Of a stretch of DNA of 64,000 nucleotides, positions 7,652-35,085 are shown one piece after another. Both the position numbers and the translations under genes were made by a program. Position 1 is the first letter of the stretch, and every line of letters starts with the position of its first letter. The notes beneath the pieces are model-generated. The model saw only the letters and a program-made list of their open reading frames with translations, was not told where the DNA came from and made no database searches. Source of the DNA: Macrostomum lignano (lineage: Eukaryota); contig NIVC01002271.1 of the NCBI GenBank assembly GCA_002269645.1, forward strand, positions 124,103-188,102, in the 5' to 3' direction.

Positions 7652-10600
7652 ATGCAGCAGCGACCCAATGGGGCCAACCATCTGTCTGTCGCCACTGTGC
7701 CAGAGACGTTCCGCAGGTCGGTCAGATCCAACGCCAGTATCCAGGCCCCGGCGTCAGAGGCTGTAGCGGCTTCCGCTGTCTCGCCAGCGACTGCCAACAA
7801 GCCGAAGTCTTCCAAGGTGGTCCGCATCAACTCTATAGAAAATCCGTTTACTCAGCTGCGCGATCGGCAGGCTCACGATCGAGCGGAGAGCGCGGCAGGT
7901 CGCAGCTCCGAGCATCGGTCGGCATCCTTTGATCAGCTGGCCCTGCTGTACGCCATGGGCCTCACCCTGTTTGGCTTTGTCTTTCCGCTATCAAACTATG
8001 TCAGCTTGGAGCCCTTCTCAGCTTGGTACCTGGCAGGCTTCTACATCATCTTGTACCTGGTTTCTATCGCCTTTCTCGTCTTCTTTCTTGCCTGGGTATT
8101 GAGACGACCGCCGCATATTTTGTTCCTATCGGACTCGGAGAGACGGCGCTACCAGCAAGAGCTTGATCAGAATCAGCAGCATCACAATCATCATCGACCG
8201 GGTCCGGTGACTTTTCACGTCGGGATGAATGGGTCTATGGACTCCGACGAAGAGGTCTGTGATCTGATCTGCTCGTAGATTGGTGTTAGAACTCAAAGTC
8301 GCAGTTCTGTGGTTACTTAGTTTGTGCTAGGAACTCATGGAGTCGTAGCCCTGTGGTTACTTAGTTTGTGCTGGGAACTCATGCATGGAGTCGTAGCCCT
8401 GTGGTTACTTACGCACGTAGTCTACGCTAGCAATTCATAGTCCTAGTGTGCTTCATACGACGTATATAAATTTTAGGTGTCTTAATATGAGCCACGTCTC
8501 CTAAGTATCTAGTGCCCAGATTCTAAATTCAAATTGTAAAATCTAATTTCATTTTCAGGACAGCGGAAACGACAACAAAGCGTTTGAAGCTAACAAGGAG
8601 GTAATGAATTTCATTAAGCACTTTTACTCCGGAGTTTATTCGAATCCGGGTTTAATATTATTAACTGTAATAAGTCATCGCTTCATCACTCCTAATTAAA
8701 ATATCCCCCGATTCTAGACCACAAAGGAGTCGACCGCTGCATCATATCTGCCCCCAGCCCCAGTTTCCGGTGTGGCCTGCATCGAACTGCACGAACCAGG
8801 AGCCAGTGAGAGTCCGGAACTGCCTGACAGGTGAAATAATTAAGGTTCATTTTCACGTATATCAGTGAGCAGAGTTGATTGCCCTCAGAGATTTTAGTTG
8901 GCTTAGTGGTACATTTTTTGTAATTGTTATGTCCTGCTTCTTAAGGATAAATCCTTGATGATAGATGCTCTCATCTGTACTCATCTGATAAGAATCTGTA
9001 CGCTTGACATCCCAGAATCGCATGATTTTCAACTCGGTAATTTGTCAAAGAAGTTTTTATTCCTAAACTCTCTGTTGATAGCTTTCTGTTTTTCTCTTCA
9101 AAGCTAGTTCCAAAGCGTGTAGGACTGTAGATTAGGTACATTTTCCGGTATATTTGATCGAGATTAAAGTCCCTATCTACCAGTCCATCGAAAAAATCCT
9201 ATTTCCTAGAATCGACTCCATCAGCAACGGCTCGTCCAACCGTAGCAGCACTGTCTTTGACCAGCAGACAACGGTGAATTCGGCGTATTCGGACGCAACA
9301 ACCGCATTCTCGGTCGCTACGGCAGCCGCCGCCGCTCGCCGTCGGCGAAACGGCGCTGCCGGCGGCGCTGGCCACGGCGGCGGCAGTAGGCGTCGTATGG
9401 GCGATCGGATCAACTCGACACTGCTGCAGAACGCCCGGGAATTTGGCGTCCAAGAGATCCCAGCTTGTTCAGTGCTGTCGCTGCAGGAGTCGCACTCGCC
9501 CTCGTTCTTCCTCCGGGTTGCCTGCTTCATCTTCGGCGCCTTGAAGATGACACACGAGACGCTGATGATTGTAGACTGCATGGCGGATATCACTGGCCAC
9601 TGCGCCTACAAGAAGGTCAGCGACTCCGTTGCCAAGGTGCTTCAGTACACGCTCAGCATCATTTTCACCGTGTTGCAGACCTTCTTTCTCTTTAAATACA
9701 GCAAAGTTTCAGTAAACATCTACAGAAATGTAAGTTTACTTAGTGCAGTTTACTTAGAACAATCTTTCATCTCTGATTCGTATAAATTTGCTAGAAAAAA
9801 ACGAATTTCAAACTCCGCCACACACAGCTCTCTGTGCTGGGCTTCATGCACCTGTTAGCTACCAACATGTGCGTTTGGTTCCAAGCGATCCTGCTGGAAA
9901 CGAGTCATAGTACAAATAATCACTCGGGTGGCAGCGACCACGGCGACGGAGACCACGGCAGTAGCAGTTACAGCAGCAATGATACATACTCGAATGCCAG
10001 CACAACTGCACACAGTGTTGGAAGCTCTTGCTCAAAAGACGTCTTCTGGAGGATGGCGCCCTACCTGTTTCCATTCACTATCGAGTACGCGCTGATGGCG
10101 GCGTTCACCTGTTTCACTCTGTATCGAAACGTTAGCAAATTTCTGGACGTCATTCAGTCCAAAGGCTTCAACGTGGCCAAGAAGTGTCTGAGAAATCGCA
10201 AACGTTCGCAGACTAGCTTCTCCGCCAGCTGCTACAAAACTGACAAAGGCTTCTTCCTTGGCGCTTTTCTGCTCATTCTGGGCATCGTGTCCGGGATCTA
10301 CTTCACTGTGTACGTCAACGACAAGCCAGACGATGCCGTTACAAGCCAATTAATCTATCAGATCACAGACCTGGTACTGCTGACAGTTAATCTAGTGCTG
10401 TGCGCCATTGCGAATGCCAAAATGCGCAAGTTGACTCTGCTACAACGGGCTGGCACGGGACCAGACTCCTGGCTGCTCGGCATCACCCTCATCGGAGTGC
10501 TGGCCTATCAGATGTTTCAATTGTTTGGCGCGTCCGCTGAGCAAGGCGTTTTTATGGCACTGCGAATCATCGAGGGCCTGCTCTCGATTGGGCAGAGCGT

Positions 10601-11819
10601 TTTCCAGGTGAGAGTCAGATAAAAAATGAATACTATATATGTCAGTTAGTAGCACTATGCTACTTATAGCTATTAGGGCTTCAGGCACTGCCGAAATTCA
10701 ATTGGCGACAGTTGATGCCCTTTTAATTGTGAATCCCTGGGCTGGCACACACTCACACAGGGTGTTACAGCGGCCTTGTTCTCATTGAGCATTTCTCGTT
10801 CGGCAGTGTACTCAGTCTCTTGGTTGGGACACAGTCTCTTGGTTAGAGACGCTGTCTCATGGTTGTGGGCGCTGTATCTTGGTTGGGGACGCTGTATCTT
10901 GGTTGGGGACGCTGTATCTTGGTTGGGGACGCTGTATCTTGGTTGGGGACGCTGTATCTTGGTTGGGGACGCTGTATCTTGGTTGGGGACGCTGTATCTT
11001 GGTTGGGGACGCTGTATCTTGGTTGGGGACGCTGTATCTTGGTTGGGGACGCTGTATCTTGGTTGGGGACGCTGTATCTTGGTTGGGGACGCTGTATCTT
11101 GGTTGGGGACGCTGTATCTTGGTTGGGGACGCTGTATCTTGGTTGGGGACGCTGTATCTTGGTTGGGGACGCTGTATCTTGGTTGGGGACGCTGTATCTT
11201 GGTTGGGGACGCTGTATCTTGGTTGGGGACGCTGTATCTTGGTTGGGGACGCTGTATCTTGGTTGGGGACGCTGTATCTTTTTTTTGGGCGCTGTATCAG
11301 AAATGTCCTGTTGCTGACGCTGTCCCAACATGCCCCATCAATAAAAATCCTGGCTACGCTCCTGCTAGCACCGCGACCGCAAATCTCACTAATAATGCGC
11401 TCACTGCAATCCTTCTACGCTCATAGGTCTACCTGGTTCTCGACGGTGAAAAGCGTCGCTCTAAAAGTGACGAAGTCATCGAGGAGAAGCCCGGCCGAGA
11501 GATGATTGCCGCCTTACTGCTGGGCAACATCGCCCAGTGGATTGTGTACACGTTGGAGATACGCGAGATCAACAATCTGCCAAACTACAGTCACGCCTAC
11601 GTACCAGTCGCGTCGAACATCTTTGCCTACGTGTGCTCGCCGCTGATCATCTTCTTCCGGTTCCATTCGGCCTGCTGTTTCGTGGAAATTTGGCGAACAG
11701 CTTACAAAGGAAGAAAGCGTCGATGTCAGAGTCATCCGGACCTGACCGTGTGCTCAACTGTTCCAGGCAGTGTGAGCGCTCTGCAGGATTCTTCGACTAA
11801 GTCGAACAGTCAGGCTTGA
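7652..11819 (+). CDS. Otop: Otopetrin-family proton channel; six exons: 7652-8254, 8559-8600, 8718-8830, 9210-9729, 9828-10607, 11427-11819
   Basis: All five introns are GT-AG and phase-consistent. Otopetrin motifs present: FYIILYLVSIAFL, SFFLRVACFIFG, LQTFFLF, GFMHLLATN, YLFPFTIEY, KPGRE, LLGNIAQW, PLIIFFRFHS. No internal stops. Confidence 0.92.
10862..11300. repeat. 20-bp minisatellite (GGTTGGGGACGCTGTATCTT)n in the last otopetrin intron
   Basis: About 21 perfect units between donor 10608 and acceptor 11426. Confidence 0.97.
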
Positions 11820-14497: not shown

Positions 14498-17400
14498 TCA
14501 ATGGCTTGCTAGTTCGGGCTTTGCTTTTTTATTTTCGGCTGTCAATGCCGCAGCAGCTGCGGCAGCTGCCGAATCGGCTTCGATGACGCAATCAGCTAAT
14601 TTCGGATCATTCTGCATCACTGACCTGAGTAGTCTGTTGAACAGCGACTCCCAGCGACTGTCGCTGCTGTGTTCGTCGCTGTCGGAAGTAACACCGGCTT
14701 CAGGATCTGCTGCTGCTGCTGCTGTCCCTGCTTCCGCGCTCGCTGGTTTCCTGTCCAAGCAGAGCATCTGCGGCGCCGCTGTCACGGCCTTATTCAATAG
14801 GCGAGCGCAGTAGGACTCCCACACGATTTTGTCCTCAGCCAGGCGGCGAATAATTTGCAGCAGCTCTTTCTTGCTGCGTGAATCGTCTCCGAAGTCATCA
14901 ACTAGGCGTTGGTGCTCGGCCTAAGTTTTGTTTGAGAGTTATCATTGTTGTTTGACCTGGTAGCACTGCTCATTTTCTTTACGCACATCTGGTAGAACTG
15001 CTCATGCATCTACTCCTTTACTCACATCTGATAGCAGTACTCATCTACTCCTACTCACACCTGGTAGGGACTGCTCATCTACTCCTACTCACACCTGGTA
15101 GGCACTGCTCATCTACTACTACTCACACCTGATAGCACTGCTCATCTACTCCTACTCACACCTGGTAGGCACTGCTCATCTACTACTACTCACACCTGAT
15201 AGCACTGCTCATCTACTCCTACTCACACCTGATAGCACTGCTCATCTACTCCTACTCACACCTGGTAGGCACTGCTCATCTATTCCTACTCACACCTGGT
15301 AGGCACTGCTCATCTATTCCTACTCACACCTGGTAGGCATGCTCATCTATTCCTACTCACACCTGGTAGGCATGCTCATCTACTCCTACTCACACCTGGT
15401 AGTACTGCTCATCTACTCCTACTCACACCTGGTAGTACTGCTCATCTACTCCTACTCACACCTGGTAGTACTGCTCATCTACTCCTACTCACACCTGGTA
15501 GTACTGCTCATCTACTCCTACTCACACCTGGTAGTACTGCTCATCTACTCCTACTCACACCAGGTAACACTGCTCATCTACTCCTTTACTCACATCACAC
15601 CTTGGTAACACTGCCCCTCTACTCCATTACGCTAGTACCCACACCTAGTAACATTGCATGCCCACCTATTTCTCCACTCACTAACACTGCTCAATGTTAC
15701 GTTAGTCTCATTTAGAATGCACAATTCTTGGTTCTCTGAACCGTCGCTCACCTGCAGCTCCTCGAGACTCTCACGCATCGCCAGCGCCTCCCGCTGCGCC
15801 CGTTTCGCCTCTTTTTCAGCGTGCGCCGCCTGCCGTTGCAACTTCAAATTGGCCCTCTTCATTTCCTCCCACTCGCTGAGGCTCTTCTGACCGTCAGCGC
15901 GATTCTTACTGAGCACAACTTTCTCAACGCGAAGCTCGTCAGCTTTGGCGCGGATTTGGGCGATGTCCTGGCGCGATCTGCCCAGCTCTTCTAGCAGTTC
16001 GTCGCAGTAAGCGTTGCACCGGGCCAGTTCGTCTTCCTTCTCGTCCAGCTCGGCGTCTTTCTCCTGCAGATCGTCCAGCAGTTTGCTGGTCTCGGCTTCG
16101 AATAATTCTACCTGCTGTCGAAGTCGGCTGTTCTCGTCTTCGTATCTGTGCAGCTTGTCGGTTAGTTTGAGCATGTACTCAACCTTGATTTGATGGTGGA
16201 GTGCTTATTAAGTTAGTTAATTAGTTTGCACTCTGAGGGCGATGATCAGGACGAAAGCCAAGTCTGCTGTGATGTCAGCATTCTCTGTTCAGTGTGTCAG
16301 TATTTTAGTGTCAGTTGGTGACAGTGTTCTAGTGTCAGTGTTCTAGTGTCAGTTGGTGTCAGTGTTCTAGTATTAGTTGGTGTCAGTGTTCTAGTGTCAG
16401 TTGGTGACAGTGTTCTAGTGTCAGTGTTCTAGTGTCAGTTGGTGTCAGTGTTCTAGTATTAGTTGGTGTCAGTGTTCTAGTGTCAGTTGGTGACAGTGTT
16501 CTAGTGTCAGTTGGTGACAGTGTTCTAATGTCAGTTGGTGACAGTGTTCTAGTGTCAGTTGGTGTTAGTGTTCTAGTGTCAGTGTTCTAGTGTCAGTTGG
16601 TGACAGTGTTCTAGTGTCAGTTGGTGACAGTGTTCTAGTGTCAGTTGGTGTCAGTGTTCTAGTGTCAGTTGGTGTCAGTGTTCTAGTGTCAGTTAGTGTC
16701 AGTGTTCTAGTGTCAGTTGGTGTCAGTGTTCTAGTGTCAGTTGGTGTCAGTGTTCTAGTGTCAGTTGGTGTCAGTGTTCTAGTGTCAGTTGGTGTCAGTG
16801 TTCTAGTGTCAGTTAGTGTCAGTGTTCTAGTGTCAGTTGGTGTCAGTGTTCTAGTGTCAGTGTTCTAGTGTCAGTTGGTGTCAGTGTTCTAGTGTCAGTG
16901 TTCTAGTATTAGTTGGTGTCAGTGTTCTAGTGTCAGTTGGTGTCAGTGTTCTAGTGTCAGTTAGTGTCAGTGTTCTAGTATCAGTTGGTGTCAGTGTTCT
17001 AGTGTCAGTTGGTGTCAGTGTTCTAGTGTCAGTTGGTGTCAGTGTTCTAGTGTCAGTTAGTGTCAGTGTTCTAGTGTCAGTTAGTGTCAGTGTTCTAGTA
17101 TCAGTTGGTGTCAGTGTTCTAGTGTCAGTTGGTGTCAGTGTTCTAGTGTCAGTTGGTGTCAGTGTTATAGTGTCAGTTAGTGTCAGTGTTCTAGTGTCAG
17201 TTGGTGTCAGTGTTCTAGTGTCAGTTGGTGTCAGTGTTCTAGTGTCAGTTGGTGTCAGTGTTCTAGTGTCAGTGTTCTAGTGTCAGTGTTCTAGTGTCAG
17301 TGTTCTAGTGTCAGTGTTCTCTGTTCACTGTGTCAGTAGTGCATTCACACCTCAGCCAGACCTTCAACAAGATCTTCAACCTGAGTCACACGAGCTATCA

Positions 17401-17819: not shown

Positions 17820-17968
17820 AACACCGAATCTCGCTCTGGCTGGCTCATTGAATAGCCTTGATGATGTGCTCGTTTGAGAAAAGTGTTGTGCGACGTTAGC
17901 GACTCGTTTGAGATGCCCGAGTCTTCACCGTCCAATTCGATTGCGTGGAACATTGGCTGGTGCGCCAT
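14498..17968 (-). CDS. Coiled-coil protein with C-terminal FIP-RBD-like (Rab11-FIP/ELKS-type) motifs; exons 17968-17351, 16183-15752, 14920-14498
   Basis: Three phase-0 exons joined by GT-AG introns. Poly-Q N-terminus, long E/K/L-rich coiled coil, then SKKELLQIIRR...WESYCARLLNKAVTAAPQML and RWESLFNRLLRSVMQNDPKL, which resemble the RBD-FIP pattern LEDYIDNLLVRVMEETPNIL. Gene structure is more certain than the family call. Confidence 0.6.
15010..15600. repeat. 33-bp intronic minisatellite (CTGCTCATCTACTCCTACTCACACCTGGTAGTA)n
   Basis: About 17 units between exons at 14920 and 15752. Confidence 0.95.
16285..17320. repeat. 24-bp intronic minisatellite (GTGTCAGTTGGTGTCAGTGTTCTA)n
   Basis: About 40 units with internal GTGTCAGT subrepeats; fills the intron 16184-17350. 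Confidence 0.95.
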
Positions 17969-18056
17969 TCAGCGCTGAAATTGGTTGGAAAGAATGCGAA
18001 AATTGTTAGTCGGAGTAGCTTCACCATAAACTCAGAACGGGTCGTGAGTGAATAAT

Positions 18057-18160
18057 CAAGGTGATCTCAGATGACTTGAGGTGTGTGAGTCAAGGTGATC
18101 TCAGGTGACTTGAGGTGTGTGAGTCAAGGTGATCTCAGGTGACTTGAGGTGTGTGAGCCA
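18057..18160. repeat. Three copies of a 34-bp repeat (TCAAGGTGATCTCAGGTGACTTGAGGTGTGTGAG)
   Basis: Direct tandem copies just 5' of the LINE insertion site. Confidence 0.85.
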
Positions 18161-18186
18161 AAGGATATTCAAGTACCCAAGGTGAA

Positions 18187-18472
18187 GCACGCGAAGGCGT
18201 ATTCAGCATGCCAGTGAAGTATGAGACAGACTAGGCCCATGGGCTAAGGTCTGCGATGCTTCACGCCTGCCCCTATCTTCAGCAGGTCAAGGCTGGTGGG
18301 AGGTCTGCACCCTCTATTTGCCTCTGGCAGCCGCAGACCCCCCCCCACGCTGTCTCGCAAGTCGACCCAGGGTACTCGTCCCCGCGTGTGTTCAAGGCAG
18401 TCCCTAGGGCTGCTGGACAGACTGGGCTCCGGCGCTGGCGACCCTATCCAGTGGCTTCGGCCGAATTTGGGT
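18187..18472 (+). ncRNA. Predicted HDV-like self-cleaving ribozyme at the LINE 5' end
   Basis: P1 GCACGCG (18187-93) with CGCGTGT (18383-89), including the G1-U wobble; P2 ACCCA (18365-69) with TGGGT (18468-72); P3 GGG/CCC around L3 TACTCGT; P1.1 AC (18374-75) with GT (18390-91); J4/2 CGAA at 18462-65. Confidence 0.75.
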
Positions 18473-18704
18473 ATGCGGGTCTGGCTCGCCAACCTGCAGG
18501 CCGTGGTACTGCTCAACGTACTCTCTAATGCCTAAGGTGTTGACCGTGCCGATGGGCTGGAAGGCCGGGGAGTAGTCCGGTCGCAAGCGGTCCCCCTCCT
18601 GGTGTCGGGCCAGCCTTGAGGGTGCTATTGGCCTACTGCCCGGTCAGGTGGAGCGGCCGGGTGGGTACCGCGCCCCTTTGAGGGTAGCCCACCAACCTTT
18701 TATC

Positions 18705-20225
18705 ATGGCCTTCGAGCCGACTATGGATAAACAAGCTATTTCTAGGGACGGGGACCCTTCTAAACCCCAACCTCAGTCCGAAGGACCGGCCGGCCCTGCT
18801 GGCAGATCCCAACCGACTGATTCAACTGTGGCAAAGGAAGGACCGGCTGGCTCTGCTGGCAGATCCGACCAGAGCTACCAAACTCAAAATACCCTAAGAC
18901 CTGCCAGCTCCGCTGGTGGATCTAAGGGAACCGCGAGCTCTGAGCCTAAAGGACCGGCCAAATCTGGCAGATCCGATGAAGCTCAGCGGGCTCGGCTTGA
19001 GCGCAAACGCGCTAAACAACGCGCCAAAAGGCAGGCCAAGAAGGGAGCTGCGGGGGCCAAAGCGGCGGCGTCCACCATGGATGCTGAAGCGACTGGAGTC
19101 CCAAGGCAACCAGGCGGGCCGGCCGGTGGAAGCTCCAGTAGTTCAGCGGCGGCGCTCCCTGGAGCTGCTGCCGCGGCTGCTGAGGCCGAAACCACGGCGC
19201 AACAAATGGCCACTGCCAACAAGGAGGTTCCTTCGGGAGCTACCTTTGCGGCGAAGGCCAAGGCCAAAATCCCGGGAGTGATCATCCAAGGTCGCGACCA
19301 GGACTGGACCACTGATCAGCTTCAAAAAGTGTGGAGTGCTGTTGACTCCTATCTGATTGAGCTGACTGTCGAGGAGGGAATCTCCATCGGCGTTGAGCGG
19401 ATGGTGCTGCGAAGCACATTCGTTCTTATTGCTCCTAGCAGCGAGGAGGACGCTCGGCGGCTGCTCCAGCGGCTACCGACGGTCTCCTTGGATGCTGACC
19501 TTGGTGGAGCTCTTTTTCTTCGCGAGGGCCAGCGTCCAAAGACGATACCCTATGTGGTTTTCGTCCCTGCTAAGAGCACCGCAGCTGGACCAGACGTTAT
19601 TCGCCGGGTCCTACTGCGTCTGAACCCCGACCTCCCTGCTAGTGGACTGGTGTATCACCGCAAAGTCCGCAGGGGGGAGACGGGCAACTCAATTGTCCTC
19701 GGCCTTTCCAGCACTTGGGCGAGTCGGTACCCTAATGGATCCTCTTTCCAGCTGGGTGCCCTCAAGCTCAAGTTGCGCCGAGGAAAGTCTGCCAAAGGGA
19801 AGGCTACTGCCAACCCCGGCATCTCCGGCAAGAGCGGGGCGCAGTCTAAGGCCCAAGGAAAGGCGCAAGCCGATCCCAAAGCCAAAGCTGCATCTCGCCC
19901 CTCTGCTAGCAGCAGTTCGGCGACCGCGGTAACGGCTCCGGCCGAGCCCCGGGAACCAAACCTGCCAGTCGGAGAAGGAGTTGAGGACGAGGCCGGGTCT
20001 TCGGAATCCGAGCTCTCCTCGGCCACCTTGGTGGGGTCTGAAGGTAAAGATGCAGGTGAGGAAGCTTCCTCCATCCTGTCATCGGAGCCTGAGGACTCTG
20101 CTGGGGGGGCCGGTGGGGTGAGGAGGCCATGGACGTCGACCAACTCCCATCTCCCAGTCAAGCCCCAGCGGCCTGGGACGAGGACGATCTGTTGTCCAAG
20201 TCTCCTTGATGGCCCTGGGCTCTAG
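18705..20225 (+). CDS. LINE ORF1 (no CCHC knuckle; central region resembles DUF4780-type LOA ORF1)
   Basis: Open frame from GTG 18648, first ATG 18705. Low-complexity K/A/S ends; core TFAAKAK...YVVFVP...VLLRLNPDLP. Domain name is recalled, not searched. Confidence 0.75.
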   Translation: MAFEPTMDKQAISRDGDPSKPQPQSEGPAGPAGRSQPTDSTVAKEGPAGSAGRSDQSYQTQNTLRPASSAGGSKGTASSEPKGPAKSGRSDEAQRARLERKRAKQRAKRQAKKGAAGAKAAASTMDAEATGVPRQPGGPAGGSSSSSAAALPGAAAAAAEAETTAQQMATANKEVPSGATFAAKAKAKIPGVIIQGRDQDWTTDQLQKVWSAVDSYLIELTVEEGISIGVERMVLRSTFVLIAPSSEEDARRLLQRLPTVSLDADLGGALFLREGQRPKTIPYVVFVPAKSTAAGPDVIRRVLLRLNPDLPASGLVYHRKVRRGETGNSIVLGLSSTWASRYPNGSSFQLGALKLKLRRGKSAKGKATANPGISGKSGAQSKAQGKAQADPKAKAASRPSASSSSATAVTAPAEPREPNLPVGEGVEDEAGSSESELSSATLVGSEGKDAGEEASSILSSEPEDSAGGAGGVRRPWTSTNSHLPVKPQRPGTRTICCPSLLDGPGL

Positions 20226-20248
20226 CCAGATATTGCATTTAATACAGT

Positions 20249-23200
20249 ATGACTAAGCTCCACGCTGCCAAAGGAGCGACATTCTGTCTGCAAATAAATT
20301 TACAGCATTGCGTATCTGCGTCAGTAAATCTGATGAAGATTGCTGAGCTGTACAGGCCAGGCCTCATCCTGATCCAGGAACCCTGGATGCGCAACGGTAA
20401 GTTGCCCAACATTCCCTCTGGCTACTCTGATTTTTATGTGTGTGGCCCGGGGAACAGCCGCCCTAGAGCGGCTATCCTCGCTGCTAGCCATCTCCAGGCT
20501 TGGCTGAGGACTGATCTCTCTGATGGAGACCTTTGCGTCATCCAATCTAATCATTTCTCTCCGCGTACGTGTCTTGTTGCCTCGGTTTATATCCCAGGCG
20601 ACAGAGACCCTGCTCCGAGAGTTTACTGCGCCTTGCGCAGTACTGCGAGTCCCAGAACGCTGAGCTGTGCTTAGGGGGCGACCTCAACGCGCACCACAAG
20701 CACTGGGGCAGCAAAGATACCAACACTAGAGGAGAGGAGCTTCTGGCCCTCATCTCTAACACAAACCTCATGCTCTGCAACCGCGGCAGCACTCCTACCT
20801 TTAATAATGGCAGATGGACCGAGGTCCTCGACGCCACACTCGTTACCCCAAGACTCTTTGACAGAGTCAAGGAGTGGAGAGTCTGGTCTGAGGAGCCCTC
20901 CCTGTCTGACCACTGCTTTATCGCCTTTAATATCGCGGACACTAAAACCCAGTCTCCGATCACTTGGAGACGCAATATCCGCAACACTGATTGGGCGGCC
21001 TACAAGGCTGCCCTTGATCTGCACCTGCAGGAACTCACGGACTTACGTCCGATTGAGACCTGCGAGGATGTGGATCATATGGCTGAGACGCTGACAGGTT
21101 GCATTATTGCAGCCTACGAAGCGGCTTGTCCTGCTCGCGCCTACAGAGGCAAGACCTCGGCGCCGTGGTGGAACCCGGAGCTGGGGAAACTCAGGCGGAA
21201 GGCCAAAAGCCTTCATCGCCGTGCCATGAAGACCGGAAACCCGGAGGACATGGAGCTTTTCCGGCAAGCCTCCCGCAATTTCAAATCTGAAGTGCGCAAG
21301 GCCAAGGAATGTAAGTGGCGCCAATTCTGCAATGAATTGGATCAAGACAGACCTACTTCTAGGCTTGTCAAGGCCCTTACAATGGACAAAATGTCCAAAT
21401 TAGCCATGATAAAAAAGATGATGGCTCTCTTACTAAAGACCCTGAAGAAGTGCTTCAGCATATGCTTAGCACATTCTTCCCGAGGGTACCTACTGCTAGA
21501 CCGGAGCCCAACCATTCGATGGATGGAGCCACCCTAGCGGCGGGCATTGTCACTGAAGACCTAATCGCTCGTGCGGTCAGAACCTTCAAACCCTTCAAAT
21601 CTCCTGGACCTGATGGTATCTACCCTGTTCTCCTTCGTGAAGCAGCCAAGATACCCTCGTTCCTGAGACTCACCCGCAATCTTATGCGGGCCTCTATCCA
21701 GCTGGGATACGTTCCCAAAAGCTGGACTGAAGCTCGAGTAGTCTTTATTCCCAAACCTGGGAAGGGTGACTACCAAAGCGTCAAGGCCTTCCGGCCAATT
21801 AGCTTAACGTCAGCAATGCTTAAGCTCACTGAGAGGCTTATTCTCTGGCGGCTGCTCTCCTGCGAGCTGACAGCGATGCCCCTCAGCAATAATCAGCACG
21901 CCTTCCGTACCGGGAGGTCGACTGACAGCGCCCTGCATGCGATTGTCGAAAAGATTGAACGGGCGGTACTGGGTGACGGTTACGCCCTGGCTCTCTTTCT
22001 TGACATTGTTGGCGCCTTCGACAACGTTATCTTTGAAGCGTTTCAGAGGGCCCTTCAAAATCGCAAAGCTCATGCTACCCTCATACGGTGGATCATGTAC
22101 ATGATCTCCAACCGTACGGTCACTGCCCAACTTCTTGGGCAAACTGCCTCCACCAGAGTCTGTAAGGGTGGACCCCAAGGCGGAGTCCTCACCCCGACGC
22201 TCTGGAACCTGGTCATGGACGCTCTTCTGAGTGACTCCCGACCTGACCCCGTCTTCAAAGTCGGGTATGCTGATGACGTCACGGCCATTGTGGCAGGACC
22301 GTCTCCCAGCACGCTCAGGGATCTGATGCAGAGCTTTATCCGCAAAGCAGAATCCTGGGCCAATGACAATGGTTTGGAACTCTCTGAGCCCAAAACCGTT
22401 GCCATTATGTTTACCAGCAGACTACGCTGGAACATACGTCCTCTGCAGCTCTACGGCAGAGATATTGCCTTCGCGCACCAGACCAGATGTCTCGGGGTCA
22501 CACTTGACCACCGGCTCAACTGGTCCTTCCACGTGAAAGCAAAAGCTAAGCGTGCCTCAGCCATCCTGGCCCAGCTCCGACGAGCACTTGGCACTTCTTG
22601 GGGTCTATCCCCAAAGCGGCTTTGGTGGATCTATACTTCCGTAGTTAGACCTGCCATTACGTACGCCTCTGTTGTCTGGGTTAGCGCTACCCAGGTCAAA
22701 AGCCATGCAGACCTGCTCAACACGATCCAAGGCAGAGCGTGTAGGCTCATCTGCAACGCCACCAGGTCCACGCCCTTTGCTGGCATGGGGGCCTTTCTTA
22801 ATCTTCCGCCTCTTGACCTCTTCATCAGGGGTGAGGCGGCTAGAACGACGCGGCGTCTAATTGATGCCGGCGTCAAATTCATTTACATGAGAGCACCTGC
22901 TAAGCGGAACCTTGTCCCGCATAGCGATCTGTGCCTCAACTTTCTCAACGAGTGTCAGGCCAATCGCGTCTTCACCGATGGCATTGCCTCAACGCTCAAC
23001 CTGAGACAGCGCTACTCCGTAGCTATCGACTCGCGCGATAACATCAATGACCATTGGAACCCTGGTGAGCTTCATTGCTACACCGACGGTTCTAAGCAGT
23101 CAGCCAACACCGGCTTTGGTGTTGGAATCTTTCTGAACGGGAGGGTCATCGCTACCCACGCTCAATACACTGGGGTCAACTCCAGTGTTTTCCAAAATGA

Positions 23201-23987
23201 AGTTCTGGCCATCAGCTCCTGCACTGCAGAGCTTCTCGCCACTGGCGTTACTGGTAAGAACATCATTTTCCATTCGGACAGCCAAGCTGCCTTGCACGCC
23301 ATCAGTGGCTGCAGCACCAACTCTGCTACAGTCCTTGACTGTATCAAACTCCTCAATGTGTTGGGTTCCGCCAACAAAATTACCCTTAAGTGGGTTCCGG
23401 GGCATGTGGGGATCCGAGGAAATGAGTTGGCTGACACCCTTGCAAAAGTTGGTGCCTCCGGCTCCTCTCTCGGCCCCGAACCTCTTGTCCCGATTCCTGG
23501 CTGTGTCATCGACTCGCGCATCAAAGCGTGGATCAGGACTCAGCACCGCTCGACTTGGGCGAACCGCACGAACTGCAGGCAATCCAGAGGCGCTGTCCCT
23601 CAGCCCTCTCACCAGCTCCGGAAGCTCCTCTTGCGCCTCTCGCGCAGAGACATCCGGGCTGCCACCATGACCCTCTCTGGTCACGGCTGCTTCTCCAGGC
23701 ACCAGTACCTGCAGGGCAACGCCACCAACGCCACCTGTAGTTTCTGCAACTCAGGTGACGAAACCGCTGAGCATTTCGTCAGCATCTGTCCCGCCTTCAC
23801 GCGGGCCAGACTCACTTACCTCGGGCCACACACATCTATTACTGAAGCGTGCAAACCCGAAAACTTTAATCAGCTCATGCGCTACCTTCGGGCCACCCGC
23901 AGGGCTGAACTCTCCTTTCCAGAGAGCACCATAGCTGCTGGCGACACTGGGGGACCTCCCTGGGCGGCGCCAACCCTCCGTCCATAG
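20249..23987 (+). CDS. LINE ORF2 (APE endonuclease, reverse transcriptase, RNase H, C-terminal Zn motif) with two 1-nt frameshifts
   Basis: APE: CLQINLQH, LIQEPW, GGDLNAHH, LSDH. RT: KSPGPDGI, FRPISLTS, LDIVGAFD, PQGGVLTP, GYADD. RNase H: YTDGSK, EVLAI, SDSQ, GHVGIRGNELAD. Zn: CSFC...HFVSIC. Frameshifts near 20616 and 21411-21416. Confidence 0.92.
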
Positions 23988-24734
23988 CGACGCGTCGGCC
24001 GTTCAGGGACTAGCGGAATGGGCGCCCGCGCCTTCCCGCTGTGTCCCCTCCGGGACAGCCCTGCAGCTAAGTCAAAGTCAACCCAAGGTGAATGACTCAA
24101 AGGAGATCAAGTGGCAGACAGTAAGAAATTCAACAACACAGCTTTAATACAGGCTTTTATAAACAGATATTTACAGATATCCAACAAAATCTGACTAATT
24201 TACAAGTCCGAACTAAGCGCACACAATGCCTGACAAGTCTGCTTAAATAAGAGTATATGCTTGTACTAGCATTCAGCGTTGGCTAAAAGTACAAAAAAGA
24301 CTTGCGCGCAGTCCGAATCGCCTGTCTTTCATATGCAAACTCTGTGTAAAAAAACCTTTTCAAACCTGTTTCGGCCGCGCCCAAGGCACAAGCAGCACAG
24401 TGTTGGCCTGCGCTTCTCTGTGTGTGCTCGGTGTGTAAGAGTTTAGCATGGAGAGATGAGATAAGCGCAAAGATAACTAATAATGGATGGCTATACTGGG
24501 TCGCTTAAGCAGATTGATGGTCGTAGCAGCCCCCACTCTCTGCTTGCTCTGGCCGAAACACAGAGACAAAAGAACTCAAGAAAAACTGTCTTTTAAGGAT
24601 TTAGCTGCTGCTGCTTTTTCTAGAAAATATTTTATTGTTCATTTTACTCTGCGCTGCGGCAAACGTGTGTTGATGGGGTTGACTCAGAATGGGGGGAGCT
24701 GTTTATACAAAACCACTCATTCTCGTCATGGAAG

Positions 24735-26835
24735 AGTCAGACAGTCCCAGGGGGAGAGGGTCAGATAGTCACTGGGGAGAGGGTCAGACAGTCACAGGGG
24801 AGAGGGTTAGACAGTCACAGGGGAGAGTGTCAGACAGTCACAGGAGAGAGGGTCAGACAGTCACAGGGGAGAGAGTTAGACACTCACAGGGGAGAGGGTT
24901 AGACAGTCACAGTGAGAGAGTTCACAGGGAGAGAGTTTACAGTGAGAGAGTTCACAGGGGAGAGGGTCAGACACTCACTGGGGAGAGGGGGTCAGACGTT
25001 CACAAGGGAGAGGGTCAGACAGTCACAGGGGAGAGGGTCAGACAGTCACAGGGGAGAGGGTCAGACAGTCACAGGGGAGAGGGTCAGACAGTCACAGGGG
25101 AGAGGGTTAGACAGTCACAGGGGAGAGGGTCAGACAGTCACAGGGGAGAGGGTTAGACAGTCACAGGAGAGAGGGTCAGACAGTCACAGGGGAGAGGGTT
25201 AGACAGTCATAGGGGAGAGGGTCAGACAGTCACAGGGGAGAGGGTCAGACAGTCACAGGGAGAGAGTTAGACAGTCACTGGGGAGAGGGTTAGACAGTCA
25301 CAGGGGAGAGGGTCAGACAGTCACAGGGGAGAGGGTTAGACAGTCACAGGAGAGAGGGTCAGACAGTCACAGGAGAGAGGGTTAGACACTCACTGGGGAG
25401 AGAGCCATACAGTCACAGGGGAGAGAGTCAGAAACTCACTGGGGAGAGGGTCCGACAGTCACAAGGGAGAGAGTTAGACAGTCACAGGGAGAGAGTTAGC
25501 AGTCACAGGGAGAGAGTTAGACAGTCACAGGGAGAGAGTTAGCAGTCACAGGGAGAGAGTTAGACAGTCACAGGGAGAGAGTTAGACAGTCACAGGGAGA
25601 GAGTTAGCAGTCACAGGGAGAGAGTTAGACAGTCACAGGGAGAGAGTTAGACAGTCACTGGGAGAGAGTTAGACAGTCACTGGGGAGAGAGTCAGACACT
25701 CACTGGGGAGAGAGTTAGCAGTCACAGGGAGAGAGTTAGACAGTCACAGGGAGAGAGTTAGACAGTCACAGGGAGAGAGTTAGACAGTCACTAGGGAGAG
25801 AATCAGACAGTCACAGGAGAGAGGGTCAGATAGTCACTGGGGAGAGGGTCAGACAGTCACAGGGGAGAGGGTCAGACAGTCACAGGGGGAGAGGGTCAGA
25901 CACTCACTGGGGAGAGGGTTAGACACTCACAGGGGAGAGAGTTAGCAGTCACAGGGAGAGAGTTAGACACTCACAGGGGAGAGAGTTAGCAGTCACAGGG
26001 AGAGAGTTAGACACTCACAAGGAAGAGGGTTAGACAGTCACAGGGAGAGAGTTAGACAGTCACAGGGAGAGAGTCAGACACTCACTGAGGAGAGGGTCAG
26101 ACACTCACTGGGGAGAGGGGGTGAGAAACTCGCTGGGGAGAGGGGTCAGACAGTCACAGGAGAGAGGGTCAGACAGTCATAGGGGAGAGGGTTAGACAGT
26201 CACAGGGGAGAGGGTCAGACAGTCACAGGGGGACAGGGTCAGACAGTCACAGGGGAGAGGGTCAGACAGTCACAGGGGAGAGGGTCAGACAGTCACAGGG
26301 GAGAGGGTCAGACAGTCACAAGGAAGAGGGTTAGACAGTCACAGGGAGAGAGTTAGACAGTCACAGGGAGAGGGTCAGACACTCACTGGGGAGAGGGGGT
26401 GAGAAACTCGCTGGGGAGAGGGTCAGACAGTCACAGGGGAGAGGGTCAGACAGTCACAGGGGAGAGGGTCAGACAGTCACAGGGGAGAGGGTCAGACAGT
26501 CACAGGGGAGAGGGTCAGACAGTCACAGGGGAGAGGGTCAGACAGTCACAGGGGAGAGGGTCAGACAGTCACAGGGGAGAGGGTCAGACAGTCACAAGGA
26601 AGAGGGTTAGACAGTCACAGGGAGAGAGTTAGACAGTCACAGGGAGAGGGTCAGACACTCACTGGGGAGAGGGGGTGAGAAACTCGCTGGGGAGAGGGTC
26701 AGACAGTCACAGGGGAGAGGGTCAGACAGTCACAGGGGAGAGGGTTAGGCAGTCACAGGGGAGAGGGTCAGACAGTCACAGGGGAGAGGGTCAGACAGTC
26801 ACAGGAGAGAGGGTCAGACAGTCACAGGGGGACAG
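24735..26835. repeat. About 23-bp minisatellite (AGACAGTCACAGGGGAGAGGGTC)n
   Basis: About 90 variable units. Confidence 0.95.
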
Positions 26836-30494: not shown

Positions 30495-31400
30495 ATGACT
30501 GAAAATGAAGGCAGTGCAGAGAGCCCTGCAGTGGCGGTGACTCAGCCCCAAGCTAGTTTTGTCAACATGTTTTTGCGGCCGCCTCAATACCAGCATGGAC
30601 AAGACTTTGAACTTTGGCTGGCGCGATTCAACAATTTCGCATCATCTCTTCCTGTGGATCAGCGCAAGAATGCTCTGCTGTCATTCCTCGACGACAAATC
30701 ATATCAAGCGGCCAGCAATTTGGATGCTGCCCTGTCCTACGACGACTTTGAGAAGGCTCTGAAAAATCGATTTCGGCCATCAACATCCTCTGCTGAGCTG
30801 CAGGCGCAGTTCTTCAATCTGACTCAAAAGGACGGTCAGTCGGTTGCAGACTATTCCGATGCCCTGATCGTTGCGGCAAAACGCGCTTTCCCGAGTCTGA
30901 TGGACACGAAAGCAGGTGCCGAGCAGGAGAAGTCGGTGACAGCGAAGGACGAGCTGCTCAAAGGTCGGTTTCTATCCGGATTGAGGGACCCAGCTGTGCG
31001 AATGCAGACGCAGATGCAGCCAAAGGCGACATTCGCTGATACAGTGGAAACAGCGCGATTCGTGGAATCGATCCAGTCGCAAGGAGGCACCGCTACGGCT
31101 CTAGCTGCTGAGATTCCCGAAGCCTTTGCAGTCGGAATTCAACGGTCTCTGAAGGAGCGGTCCAACAAGCTCAGCCGCTGGGAGTCAAAGGAACAGGATC
31201 ATCGTCAGAGCGGCGACAGACGCAGAGTCGTGACATGCTGGAAGTGCGGTAAGCCGGGCCATGTTCAAAGATTTTGCACTCAGAAGTCGGGAAACTTCGA
31301 TGGAGCGGCGACCGCTGGGGTGCCGTTCCGCAAGCGAGAATCCCGGCGCAACCAGTCGTGGAGGTGTCCTGCTCAGCCACTGGTGCCAACATGCTGGTAA
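30495..31400 (+). CDS. gag: Gypsy gag
   Basis: ATG just after the PBS; WLARFNNF capsid-like region, FLSGLRD, zinc knuckle CWKCGKPGHVQRFC. Confidence 0.85.
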   Translation: MTENEGSAESPAVAVTQPQASFVNMFLRPPQYQHGQDFELWLARFNNFASSLPVDQRKNALLSFLDDKSYQAASNLDAALSYDDFEKALKNRFRPSTSSAELQAQFFNLTQKDGQSVADYSDALIVAAKRAFPSLMDTKAGAEQEKSVTAKDELLKGRFLSGLRDPAVRMQTQMQPKATFADTVETARFVESIQSQGGTATALAAEIPEAFAVGIQRSLKERSNKLSRWESKEQDHRQSGDRRRVVTCWKCGKPGHVQRFCTQKSGNFDGAATAGVPFRKRESRRNQSWRCPAQPLVPTCW

Positions 31401-34400: not shown

Positions 34401-35085
34401 AGTCCACAAGTCGACTAGTCAGACACCTTCGGCGATGCATTTCGGCCGGGAACTGCGACTACCACTGGACTTGGCGTACGGAGGTCTGGCGCCGGATAGG
34501 CAACGTCCTTGTGAATGGGTGGCCGAGCTGCGGAGCCGGCTGCAGACATCGCACGAGAGGGCGCGACAAAACTTGGAGGCAGCGCAACTGCACCAGAAGG
34601 CAGCGTACGACAGGAGGTGCCACGGGGAGGCATTTAGCGAGGACGATCTGGTCTGGCTGCACAATCCGGCGCTGAAGCGAGGCGAGAGCCGAAAATTTCA
34701 TCGATGGTGGACTGGGCCATGGCGCGTTAAAAAGCAGATCTCAGACGTCACCTACCGCATTCAGCACGAGGCCAATGCACGACGGCGAAGGGTGGTGCAT
34801 TTCAATCGCCTGAAGCCATGCAACACGGCCAGTCCAGCTGCAGCACCTCAATTGCAACCAGCGGCGCAACTGCACAATCCTGACGAGGACGACCTGAGAT
34901 TTGACGGCGTCCCAGCCGGCGCCCCAGCCGGCGCCCCGGTCGGCGCCCCTGCTGATGTTCAAGCGCATCCAGAACAGCCTGTATTGCTTCGTAGTGAGAG
35001 GGCCCGTGCCCCGCCAGAATTTTTTGGTGAAGTGTACCGTATACTCATTGAATGCAGATTTTCTCAGATTTTTTTGAAACATTGA
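31274..35085 (+). pseudogene. pol: Gypsy pol (protease, RT, RNase H, integrase) with frameshifts and a deletion
   Basis: PR: LVDTGCS. RT: SSPVILVKKKDG, LDFTSGY, FFDDVVIF. RH: LDTDAS, RELLAIV, TDHASL, NADALS. IN: FSKWTEAF, VHTDQ, GGCERMN, WTGPWRV. Frame breaks near 33000, 33890 and 34060; HHCC region partly deleted. Confidence 0.9.

What the first reader, a model, noticed from the sequence alone, without database searches (positions are those of the whole stretch)
18187..18472. HDV-like ribozyme fold whose cleavage site is the first base of the LINE
Seen: the base right after the 5' TSD starts GCACGCG, which pairs with CGCGTGT (18383-89) about 190 nt away, with a G-U wobble at position 1. Between and after them the HDV topology appears in order: P2 ACCCA, P3 GGG, L3 TACTCGT, P3' CCC, P1', GT, a structured P4 region, CGAA, and P2' TGGGT. 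L3 has A where U/C is usual, and it is matched by T in P1.1. The long J1/2 (about 171 nt) has its own helix (GGTCTGC with GCAGACC). The TSD boundary and the fold were found independently and coincide. Established: HDV-like ribozymes process 5' ends of R2, RTE, L1Tc and some other non-LTR elements, and cut 5' of the G that opens P1. Inference: this element frees its exact 5' end from read-through transcripts. Caveat: two extra U lie between CGAA and P2', and P4 was not fully resolved.
Basis: partly seen in the sequence, partly recalled or inferred. Interest (0 to 1): 0.88.

Follow-up and report, generated by a model that had tools for sequence, protein, structure and literature searches.

The report
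Self-cleaving ribozyme fold opening a flatworm LINE
The first ~240 bases of a jumping gene (LINE) in a Macrostomum flatworm genome fold like the hepatitis-delta-type self-cutting RNA, and the predicted cut falls exactly on the element's first base. This is a new example of a known trick, not a new kind of system.

Summary
A 5,894-bp LINE (18187-24080) sits between perfect 12-bp target-site duplications. Its first 7 bases pair with 18383-18389, directly after a GGG/UACUCGU/CCC hairpin, as in HDV-like ribozymes. With the 5' end fixed, 5 of 20,000 shuffles reach the level that adds the L3 U..CG signature, and none meets the full descriptor. This is the only full match to my core descriptor in the 64-kb window, either strand.

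One related element could be fetched (L001, ORF2 59% identical). It has the same fold starting at its first base. Both sides changed in 2 P1 pairs, both P1.1 pairs, 2-3 P2 pairs and 1 P4 pair.

The conserved, covarying version is compact:
- P4 hairpin 18392-18417
- J4/2 CAGAC 18418-18422
- P2' UGGG 18423-18426

That makes C18418, not C18462, the likely catalytic base. The 171-nt J1/2 is a structured domain with the same architecture in both elements.

Rfam models do not detect the fold, and seven relatives with 33-37% ORF2 identity show no such core. Self-cleavage itself is untested, and the covariation rests on two sequences.

Verdict: a new member of a known kind, since HDV-like ribozymes already process R2, R4, Dong, RTE, Baggins and L1Tc. 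Interest is moderate.

The parts
18175..18186 (+). 5' target-site duplication ACCCAAGGTGAA
   Evidence: It is identical to 24081-24092, and the bases outside it differ on both sides.
18187..18193 (+). P1 5' strand GCACGCG. The predicted cleavage is between A18186 and G18187.
   Evidence: It forms 7 bp with 18383-18389, starting with a G-U wobble. In L001, GCCUGC at bases 1-6 pairs with GCAGGC at 189-194. Two pairs changed on both sides.
18194..18365 (+). J1/2: linker AAG, a structured P1.2-like domain (18197-18358), then linker AAGUCGA
   Evidence: The MFE is -68.2 kcal/mol with z -2.2. L001 folds on its own to the same multi-hairpin architecture. RNAalifold finds 7 pairs changed on both sides. 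The apical block 18219-18264 is 39/46 identical to L001.
18366..18369 (+). P2 5' strand CCCA (compact model).
   Evidence: It pairs with UGGG 18423-26. L001 has CUCAGA/UCUGAG at the same relative place, and 2-3 pairs changed on both sides.
18370..18382 (+). P3 GGG, L3 UACUCGU, P3' CCC
   Evidence: L3 carries the U..CG signature of HDV-like ribozymes (descriptor in PMC6326823). L001 has GGG UCUCCGU CCC.
18383..18389 (+). P1' CGCGUGU
   Evidence: It is the complement of 18187-93 and lies directly after P3'.
18390..18391 (+). P1.1 3' strand GU, pairing with C18375 and A18374 of L3
   Evidence: The pairs are C-G and A-U in the window and U-A and C-G in L001, so both changed on both sides.
18392..18417 (+). 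P4 hairpin (compact model)
   Evidence: The MFE is -11.6 kcal/mol. L001 197-228 has the same layout: a 2-bp base, an AA(U) internal loop, then an 8-10-bp stem. Its sequence is different, and its MFE is -24.5 kcal/mol with z -5.1.
18418..18422 (+). J4/2 CAGAC. C18418 is the preferred candidate for the catalytic cytosine.
   Evidence: CAGA fits the CRRA descriptor (PMC6326823). L001 has UGC or CUGC here, which is non-canonical.
18423..18426 (+). P2' UGGG (compact model), the 3' end of the proposed ribozyme
   Evidence: The MFE of 18365-18426 contains P2, P3 and P4 together. P2 covaries with L001.
18435..18472 (+). Probably not part of the catalytic core.
   Evidence: The homologous sequence in L001 is GGCUAAACCGGGUAC, with no P2 partner there. 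Both elements have an ACCC in an upstream hairpin loop that could pair with GGGU.
18705..20225 (+). ORF1 (506 aa from the first ATG)
   Evidence: It has no Pfam hit. It is 87-98% identical to parts of Macrostomum lignano UniRef entries. Its central domain is 39% identical to L001 ORF1.
20285..23987 (+). ORF2 (APE endonuclease, reverse transcriptase, RNase H), broken into three frames
   Evidence: Pfam hits are. tblastn with the intact L001 ORF2 shows frame changes near 20640 and 21440.
23988..24080 (+). 3' UTR ending in (AAGTCA)2
   Evidence: The blocks TAGCGGAATGGGCG and CCCTGCAGCTAAGTCAAAGT are identical in L001.
24081..24092 (+). 3' target-site duplication ACCCAAGGTGAA

Best explanation
Bases 18187-18426 encode an HDV-like (nested double-pseudoknot) self-cleaving ribozyme that forms the 5' end of a Macrostomum LINE of the APE/RT/RNase H type.

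Proposed layout:
- P1 18187-93 / 18383-89
- a large structured J1/2 (P1.2-like) domain, 18197-18358
- P2 18366-69 / 18423-26
- P3 18370-72 / 18380-82
- L3 UACUCGU
- P1.1 18374-75 / 18390-91
- P4 18392-18417
- J4/2 CAGAC 18418-22

Inferred mechanism: when the element is transcribed from upstream, the RNA cuts itself 5' of G18187, with C18418 as the likely general acid. The transcript then begins on the element's first base and still carries the whole ribozyme. Reverse transcription to that end reproduces a complete element, which is why the integrated copy starts at G18187 directly after the TSD.

Shown here: the sequence elements, their improbability by chance, the coincidence with the TSD, and covariation with one relative.

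Inferred only: catalysis, which cytosine is catalytic, and the dependence on read-through transcription. This particular copy has a frameshifted ORF2 and is not autonomous.
For: - All elements are present at the stated positions.
- In 20,000 shuffles with the first 7 nt fixed, 5 reach the L3-signature level, 3 also have P2, and 0 also have CNRA.
- This is the only full-strength core hit in 128 kb of window sequence.
- L001 is a related element with ORF2 59% identical and ORF1 domain 39% identical. It has GGG-UCUCCGU-CCC-GCAGGC, and P1 GCCUGC is the first 6 bases of its contig.
- In the pair table, P1 has 2 pairs changed on both sides and 1 on one side. P1.1 has 2 of 2 changed on both sides. 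Compact P2 has 2-3 and the P4 base has 1. P3 is invariant.
- Folding 18365-18426 and L001 170-237 alone gives P2, P3 and P4 together, with z -3.45 for L001.
- The J1/2 domain folds to the same architecture in both elements.
- Literature fit: natural R2 ribozymes have 23 to over 700 nt between the P1 and P1' strands, J1/2 loops of 216-498 nt in silkmoths, variable P4 and 6-7-bp P1 (PMC3774820). Structured P1.2 domains in J1/2 activate large HDV-like ribozymes (PMC4908430). The descriptor is G1-Y, P1.1, U..CG in L3 and CRRA (PMC6326823). Cleavage at the element's 5' end is reported for R4, Dong, Baggins, L1Tc and RTE (PMC3774820).
Against: - No Rfam HDV-family model matches, either at gathering score or at E<=10. 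This is expected with a 171-nt insert and unmodelled pseudoknots, but it is still a negative result.
- Only one relative with a 5' UTR could be obtained, so covariation rests on two sequences.
- In that relative J4/2 is UGC/CUGC rather than CRRA, P1 is 6 bp, and G1 pairs with C, not U.
- Compact P2 in the window is only 4 contiguous bp, followed by an A-C mismatch and a G-U.
- P3 never varies, so nothing tests it.
- Seven relatives with 33-37% ORF2 identity show no such core upstream of ORF1.
- No cleavage data exist.
Confidence: 0.75

Rival explanations
1. A real HDV-like ribozyme with the reader's 3' half: a long multi-hairpin P4 region 18392-18461, catalytic C18462 in CGAA, and P2' UGGGU 18468-72.
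For: ACCCA/UGGGU is 5 contiguous bp, against 4 in the compact model, and CGAA is a canonical J4/2. The block GGC-YRAA-NNN-GGGUA is conserved in sequence in L001.
Against: L001 has no ACCC-type strand next to P3 to pair with its GGGU, while its proximal UCUGAG pairs perfectly with CUCAGA. C18462 lies inside a GGC-UUCG-GCC hairpin. The 70-nt region is not closed by one helix, so C18462 would not follow a P4 that stacks on P1.1. Folding 18365-18472 gives z -0.46.
Confidence: 0.1
2. A conserved structured 5' UTR that does not cleave. The long-range pairings would serve another role, such as an internal promoter, a site bound by the element's own proteins, or translation initiation. The 5' end would be set by transcription initiation.
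For: The best-conserved part of the UTR is not the catalytic core but an apical hairpin in J1/2, 39/46 identical. L001's J4/2 is non-canonical. No Rfam match was found. In L1Tc, the same 77 nt are both promoter and ribozyme (PMC3383444).
Against: The features that covary or are kept are exactly the diagnostic HDV ones. Both P1.1 pairs changed on both sides. L3 keeps U..CG. P1 starts with G on the element's first base. No other known function requires this pseudoknot.
Confidence: 0.12
3. A chance resemblance, found because a loose HDV descriptor with free J1/2 and P4 lengths matches many sequences.
For: A loose descriptor gave dozens of hits in a few kb.
Against: With the sequence signatures and the 5' end fixed, 0-5 of 20,000 shuffles match. 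There is one site in 128 kb. It recurs independently, with compensatory changes, in L001.
Confidence: 0.03

Closest known systems
R2 retrotransposon HDV-like ribozymes (Drosophila type, cleaving at the element's 5' junction)
   Same: An HDV-like double pseudoknot encoded in the 5' UTR of a non-LTR element. In Drosophila the cut is at the exact 5' end. The separation between the P1 and P1' strands is long and variable (23 to over 700 nt), P1 is 6-7 bp, and P4 is variable (PMC3774820).
   Different: R2 is a site-specific element with a restriction-like endonuclease, co-transcribed with 28S rRNA. This element is an APE/RT/RNase H LINE with two ORFs inserted in ordinary DNA with a 12-bp TSD. Most R2 lineages cut inside the 28S sequence, not at the element's end.
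Large HDV-like ribozymes with a P1.2 peripheral domain (drz-Agam-2 type)
   Same: A structured helix or domain inside J1/2 that brings P1 and P2 together (PMC4908430). Here a 162-nt domain is closed by a helix 3 nt after P1 and 7 nt before P2.
   Different: The domain here is a multi-branched structure of about 160 nt with a strongly conserved apical hairpin, much larger than a single P1.2 helix. Whether it activates cleavage is untested.
Ribozymes at the 5' ends of Baggins, RTE, R4/Dong and L1Tc elements
   Same: HDV-like ribozymes whose cleavage site coincides with the 5' end of a non-LTR element, taken to release it from co-transcripts (PMC3774820, PMC6765202, PMC3185411).
   Different: The host phylum is different (Platyhelminthes, Macrostomum). 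The LINE clade was not determined here, and there is no sequence similarity detectable with Rfam models. In the flatworm Schistosoma mansoni, the ribozymes linked to non-LTR elements are twister variants (PMC8501958).
Mammalian CPEB3 ribozyme
   Same: From my own knowledge, not tested here: a 7-nt L3 of the form UNCNCGU, GU after P1' giving a weak P1.1, and a CGAA J4/2.
   Different: CPEB3 is compact, intronic and not part of a mobile element.

Membership tests
HDV-like self-cleaving ribozymes | Strand order P1, J1/2, P2, P3, L3, P3', P1', P1.1, P4, J4/2, P2', giving a nested double pseudoknot | tested here: met
   All strands are present in that order in the window and in L001.
HDV-like self-cleaving ribozymes | P1 of 6-7 bp directly after P3', whose first base is G paired with a pyrimidine (descriptor in PMC6326823) | tested here: met
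   The window has 7 bp with G18187-U18389. L001 has 6 bp with G1-C194. Two pairs changed on both sides.
HDV-like self-cleaving ribozymes | P1.1: L3 positions 2 and 3 pair with the two bases after P1' | tested here: met
   The window has A18374-U18391 and C18375-G18390. L001 has C180-G196 and U181-A195. Both pairs changed on both sides. The usual pairs are two C-G; here each element has one non-G-C pair.
HDV-like self-cleaving ribozymes | L3 with conserved U at position 1 and CG at positions 5-6 | tested here: met
   UACUCGU in the window and UCUCCGU in L001.
HDV-like self-cleaving ribozymes | 3-bp P3 | tested here: inconclusive
   GGG/CCC is present in both elements but never varies, so covariation cannot test it.
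HDV-like self-cleaving ribozymes | P2 of about 5 bp or more, closing the fold at the 3' end | tested here: inconclusive
Compact P2 is 4 bp, then a mismatch, then a G-U in the window, and 6 bp in L001, with 2-3 pairs changed on both sides.
HDV-like self-cleaving ribozymes | Catalytic C at the start of J4/2 (CRRA or CNRA) | tested here: inconclusive
   The window has CAGA(C) at 18418-22, and also CGAA at 18462-65. L001 has UGC or CUGC.
HDV-like self-cleaving ribozymes | Mg2+-dependent self-cleavage 5' of G+1, giving a 5'-OH and a 2',3'-cyclic phosphate | not testable with these tools
   This needs in vitro transcription and cleavage assays.
HDV-like self-cleaving ribozymes | Match to a curated Rfam HDV-family covariance model. 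This is not a defining feature, but it is the usual way such ribozymes are detected. | tested here: not met
   No HDV-family hit at gathering score or at E<=10 in the window, and none at E<=5 in L001.
5'-end-processing ribozymes of non-LTR retrotransposons | The cleavage site coincides with the first base of the element | tested here: met
   P1 starts at G18187, the base after the 12-bp TSD. In L001, P1 starts at contig base 1, which is homologous to 18187.
5'-end-processing ribozymes of non-LTR retrotransposons | The element is transcribed as part of a longer co-transcript | not tested
   No expression data were available.

The most novel reading that the evidence does not exclude
The 162-nt J1/2 domain is more than a passive spacer. 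Its apical hairpin is better conserved than the catalytic core (39/46 identical between elements whose ORF2 proteins are 59% identical). It could be a functional module coupled to the ribozyme, such as a binding site for the element's own proteins or a switch that controls folding of P1 and so when the RNA is cut. In addition, the relative's UGC/CUGC J4/2 may mean that this lineage uses a non-canonical catalytic strand. Either reading would make this a distinct regulated variant of HDV-like ribozymes.
Probability: 0.2. Interest if true: 0.55.

Novelty: new member of a known kind. Interest (0 to 1): 0.4.

Why it matters
If the fold is active, it extends HDV-like 5'-end processing to an APE/RT/RNase H LINE in a free-living flatworm, Macrostomum, which is a laboratory model. 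In the papers I read, flatworm examples were an R2 element in a planarian and twister variants in Schistosoma. It also shows that curated covariance models miss ribozymes with very long structured J1/2 inserts. Combining TSD-defined 5' ends with a simple core descriptor could therefore recover more of them. The conserved J1/2 domain gives a natural system for testing how peripheral domains affect HDV-like catalysis. It does not change the general picture of how such elements work.

Tried and rejected
- **Rfam.** I ran cmscan at gathering score on the whole window, at E<=10 on 17900-19000, and at E<=5 on six related loci. No HDV-family hit appeared, only weak unrelated matches.
- **Loose descriptor.** A first, loose descriptor gave dozens of chance hits, so I dropped it for one that includes the sequence signatures.
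- **Other copies in the window.** There are none.
- **More relatives with a 5' UTR.**
  - The ORF1 protein search found only three M. lignano UniRef chimeras without contigs.
  - The ORF1-domain alignment search found nothing.
  - Exact look-ups of the window's ORF1 found nothing.
  - P0004 had no DNA available, and P0009 (L002) lacks the UTR.
  - A pattern scan of the conserved J1/2 block in metagenome contigs gave 32 hits, all chance.
  - Viral and genome collections gave nothing.
- **Distant relatives.** Seven elements with 33-37% ORF2 identity (L003, L036-L041) have no HDV-like core upstream of ORF1 by my descriptor.
- **Alignment for a covariance model.** MAFFT misaligned the core by one base, so I built no covariance model and made the pair table by hand in a script.
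- **Is the TSD an artefact of the nearby 34-bp tandem repeat?** I rejected this. Removing the LINE without a TSD would leave two adjacent 12-mers, which does not fit the repeat period.
- **LINE clade.** It was not determined. Ruminski et al. 2011 (PMC3308841) is not held in the library.

Full report
**What is at the site**

The window is flatworm DNA. ORF1 of the element is 87-98% identical to parts of Macrostomum lignano UniRef entries.

A non-LTR retrotransposon occupies 18187-24080 on the + strand. It carries:
- ORF1 at 18705-20225 (506 aa, no Pfam family)
- ORF2 with APE endonuclease, reverse transcriptase and RNase H domains

ORF2 is split over three frames, with shifts near 20640 and 21440, so this copy is not autonomous.

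The element ends in (AAGTCA)2 and is flanked by a perfect 12-bp duplication, ACCCAAGGTGAA, at 18175-86 and 24081-92. The bases just outside the two 12-mers differ, so the first base of the element is G18187. A 34-bp tandem repeat lies just upstream, but it cannot explain the duplication.

**Check of the observation**

- GCACGCG (18187-93) forms 7 pairs with CGCGTGT (18383-89), opening with a G-U wobble.
- The partner strand follows directly after GGG (18370-72), UACUCGU (18373-79), CCC (18380-82).
- The next two bases, GU (18390-91), pair with C18375 and A18374 of the loop, which is the P1.1 arrangement.
- ACCCA (18365-69), CGAA (18462-65) and TGGGT (18468-72) are also present.

A loose HDV descriptor matches many places by chance, so I tested a stricter one taken from the published descriptor (PMC6326823): G1 paired to a pyrimidine, P1.1, U..CG in L3, and CRRA/CNRA in J4/2.

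With the first 7 bases fixed, 20,000 dinucleotide shuffles of the 519-nt UTR gave these counts:

| Requirement added | Shuffles passing |
|---|---|
| P1' partner present | 11,906 |
| adjacent 3-bp hairpin | 1,643 |
| P1.1 | 270 |
| L3 signature | 5 |
| P2 | 3 |
| CNRA before P2' | 0 |

Over both strands of the whole window, the core descriptor finds only this site plus one weaker 6-bp hit.

**Comparative evidence**

ORF2 has many relatives in public assemblies, but only one close relative came with its 5' UTR. This is L001, a 6,492-nt Logan contig with intact ORF1 and ORF2. Its ORF2 is 59% identical and its ORF1 domain 39% identical to the window's.

L001's first bases, GCCTGCAATGG, are homologous to the window's GCACGCGAAGG. 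At 176-196 it has GGG UCUCCGU CCC GCAGGC AG. This is the same core, with a P1' complementary to the contig's first six bases.

Pair by pair:

| Helix | Result in window vs L001 |
|---|---|
| P1 | 2 pairs changed on both sides, 1 on one side |
| P1.1 | both pairs changed on both sides (C-G/A-U vs U-A/C-G) |
| P3 | invariant |
| L3 | keeps U..CG in both |

P1.1 is the hallmark of the HDV double pseudoknot, so its full compensation is the strongest single argument.

L001 continues about 525 nt past the element's 3' end into unrelated sequence, yet it starts exactly at P1 base 1. This fits either an assembly break at the repeat boundary or an RNA that was cut there. I could not tell which.

That region is not closed by one helix, and C18462 sits in a GGC-UUCG-GCC hairpin.

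L001 keeps a homologous block (GGCUAAACCGGGUAC), but it has no ACCC-type strand next to P3 to pair with it.

Both elements instead share a compact layout right after P1.1:

| Part | Window | L001 |
|---|---|---|
| P4 hairpin (2-bp base, AA(U) internal loop, 8-10-bp stem) | 18392-18417 | 197-228 |
| J4/2 | CAGAC, 18418-22 | UGC |
| P2' | UGGG, 18423-26, pairing with CCCA 18366-69 | UCUGAG, pairing with CUCAGA |

P2 has 2-3 pairs changed on both sides. Folding 18365-18426 or L001 170-237 alone returns P2, P3 and P4 together, with z -3.45 for L001.

CAGA fits CRRA, so C18418 is my preferred catalytic base. L001's UGC/CUGC does not fit, and this remains unexplained. In silkmoth R2 ribozymes only the catalytic C and one A are conserved in this region (PMC3774820).

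**J1/2**

The 171-nt J1/2 is a closed domain, not a floppy linker. It consists of a 3-nt linker, a closing helix, three hairpins, and a 7-nt linker before P2.

The window and L001 fold independently to the same architecture, with z about -2.2 each. RNAalifold finds 7 pairs changed on both sides. Its apical hairpin block is 39/46 identical, which is better conserved than the core.

Long inserts between P1 and P1' (23 to over 700 nt) are normal in R2 ribozymes (PMC3774820). A structured P1.2 helix in J1/2 is known to speed up large HDV-like ribozymes (PMC4908430).

**Negative results**

No Rfam HDV-family model matches the window or L001. The long insert and the unmodelled pseudoknots make that unsurprising.

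Seven elements with 33-37% ORF2 identity show no such core upstream of ORF1. The ribozyme is so far seen only in the window/L001 lineage.

No further close relatives could be retrieved.

**Mechanism, and how sure**

Most likely (about 0.75), this is a genuine HDV-like ribozyme kept by selection. It would cut a longer transcript 5' of G18187, so that the RNA starts on the element's first base and carries the whole ribozyme into each new copy.

The sequence, the statistics and the covariation are shown here. Catalysis, the identity of the catalytic C and the source of transcription are inferred.

**Comparison and novelty**

[quoted passage not shown] This would be a new member of that kind, in a new host group and an undetermined LINE clade.

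I found no paper linking Macrostomum to ribozymes. In Schistosoma, twister variants play the corresponding role (PMC8501958).

Interest is moderate.

Noticed in passing
window 18435-18472; L001 238-281: Downstream of the compact ribozyme, both elements keep a block GGC-YRAA-NNN-GGGUA. Both also have an upstream hairpin whose loop contains ACCC (window loop CGACCCUAU, 18439-47). ACCC could pair with GGGU to form a small pseudoknot. Its function is unknown. It could be a protein-binding or translation element.
   Followed up: partly
window 18219-18264; L001 33-78: The apical hairpin of the J1/2 domain is 39/46 identical between the two elements. This is more conserved than the catalytic core and much more than the rest of the UTR.
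   Followed up: partly
window 23988-24080; L001 5850-5966: The 3' UTRs share two identical blocks, TAGCGGAATGGGCG and CCCTGCAGCTAAGTCAAAGT, and the same AAGTCA-type tail. This is probably the site the reverse transcriptase recognises.
   Followed up: no
window 17000-17301, 18056-18161, 24739-26000 and beyond: There are tandem repeat arrays with periods of 24, 34 and 23 bp around the LINE. The LINE inserted at the degenerate edge of the 34-bp array.
   Followed up: partly
window 31274-35085: A Ty3/gypsy-type LTR retrotransposon pol region (protease, RT, RNase H, integrase), split over three ORFs.
   Followed up: no
window 9834-10622: An ORF with a strong otopetrin match (Pfam E 7e-40), probably an exon of a host gene about 7.5 kb upstream of the LINE on the same strand.
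   Followed up: no
protein hits P0001, P0002, P0007: Macrostomum lignano UniRef entries named UBC9, GPCR and ABC transporter contain stretches 87-98% identical to this LINE's ORF1 or ORF2. They look like gene models fused to LINE fragments.
   Followed up: no
protein hits P0027, P0037, P0055: Proteins annotated as coming from Gammaproteobacteria or Cyanobacteria MAGs are full-length LINE ORF2 proteins (APE, RT, RNase H). This suggests animal DNA binned into bacterial genomes.
   Followed up: no
L001 1-6492: The contig begins exactly at the first base of P1 but runs about 525 nt past the element's 3' end. If the run is RNA-seq, this pattern would itself indicate 5' processing together with 3' read-through.
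   Followed up: no
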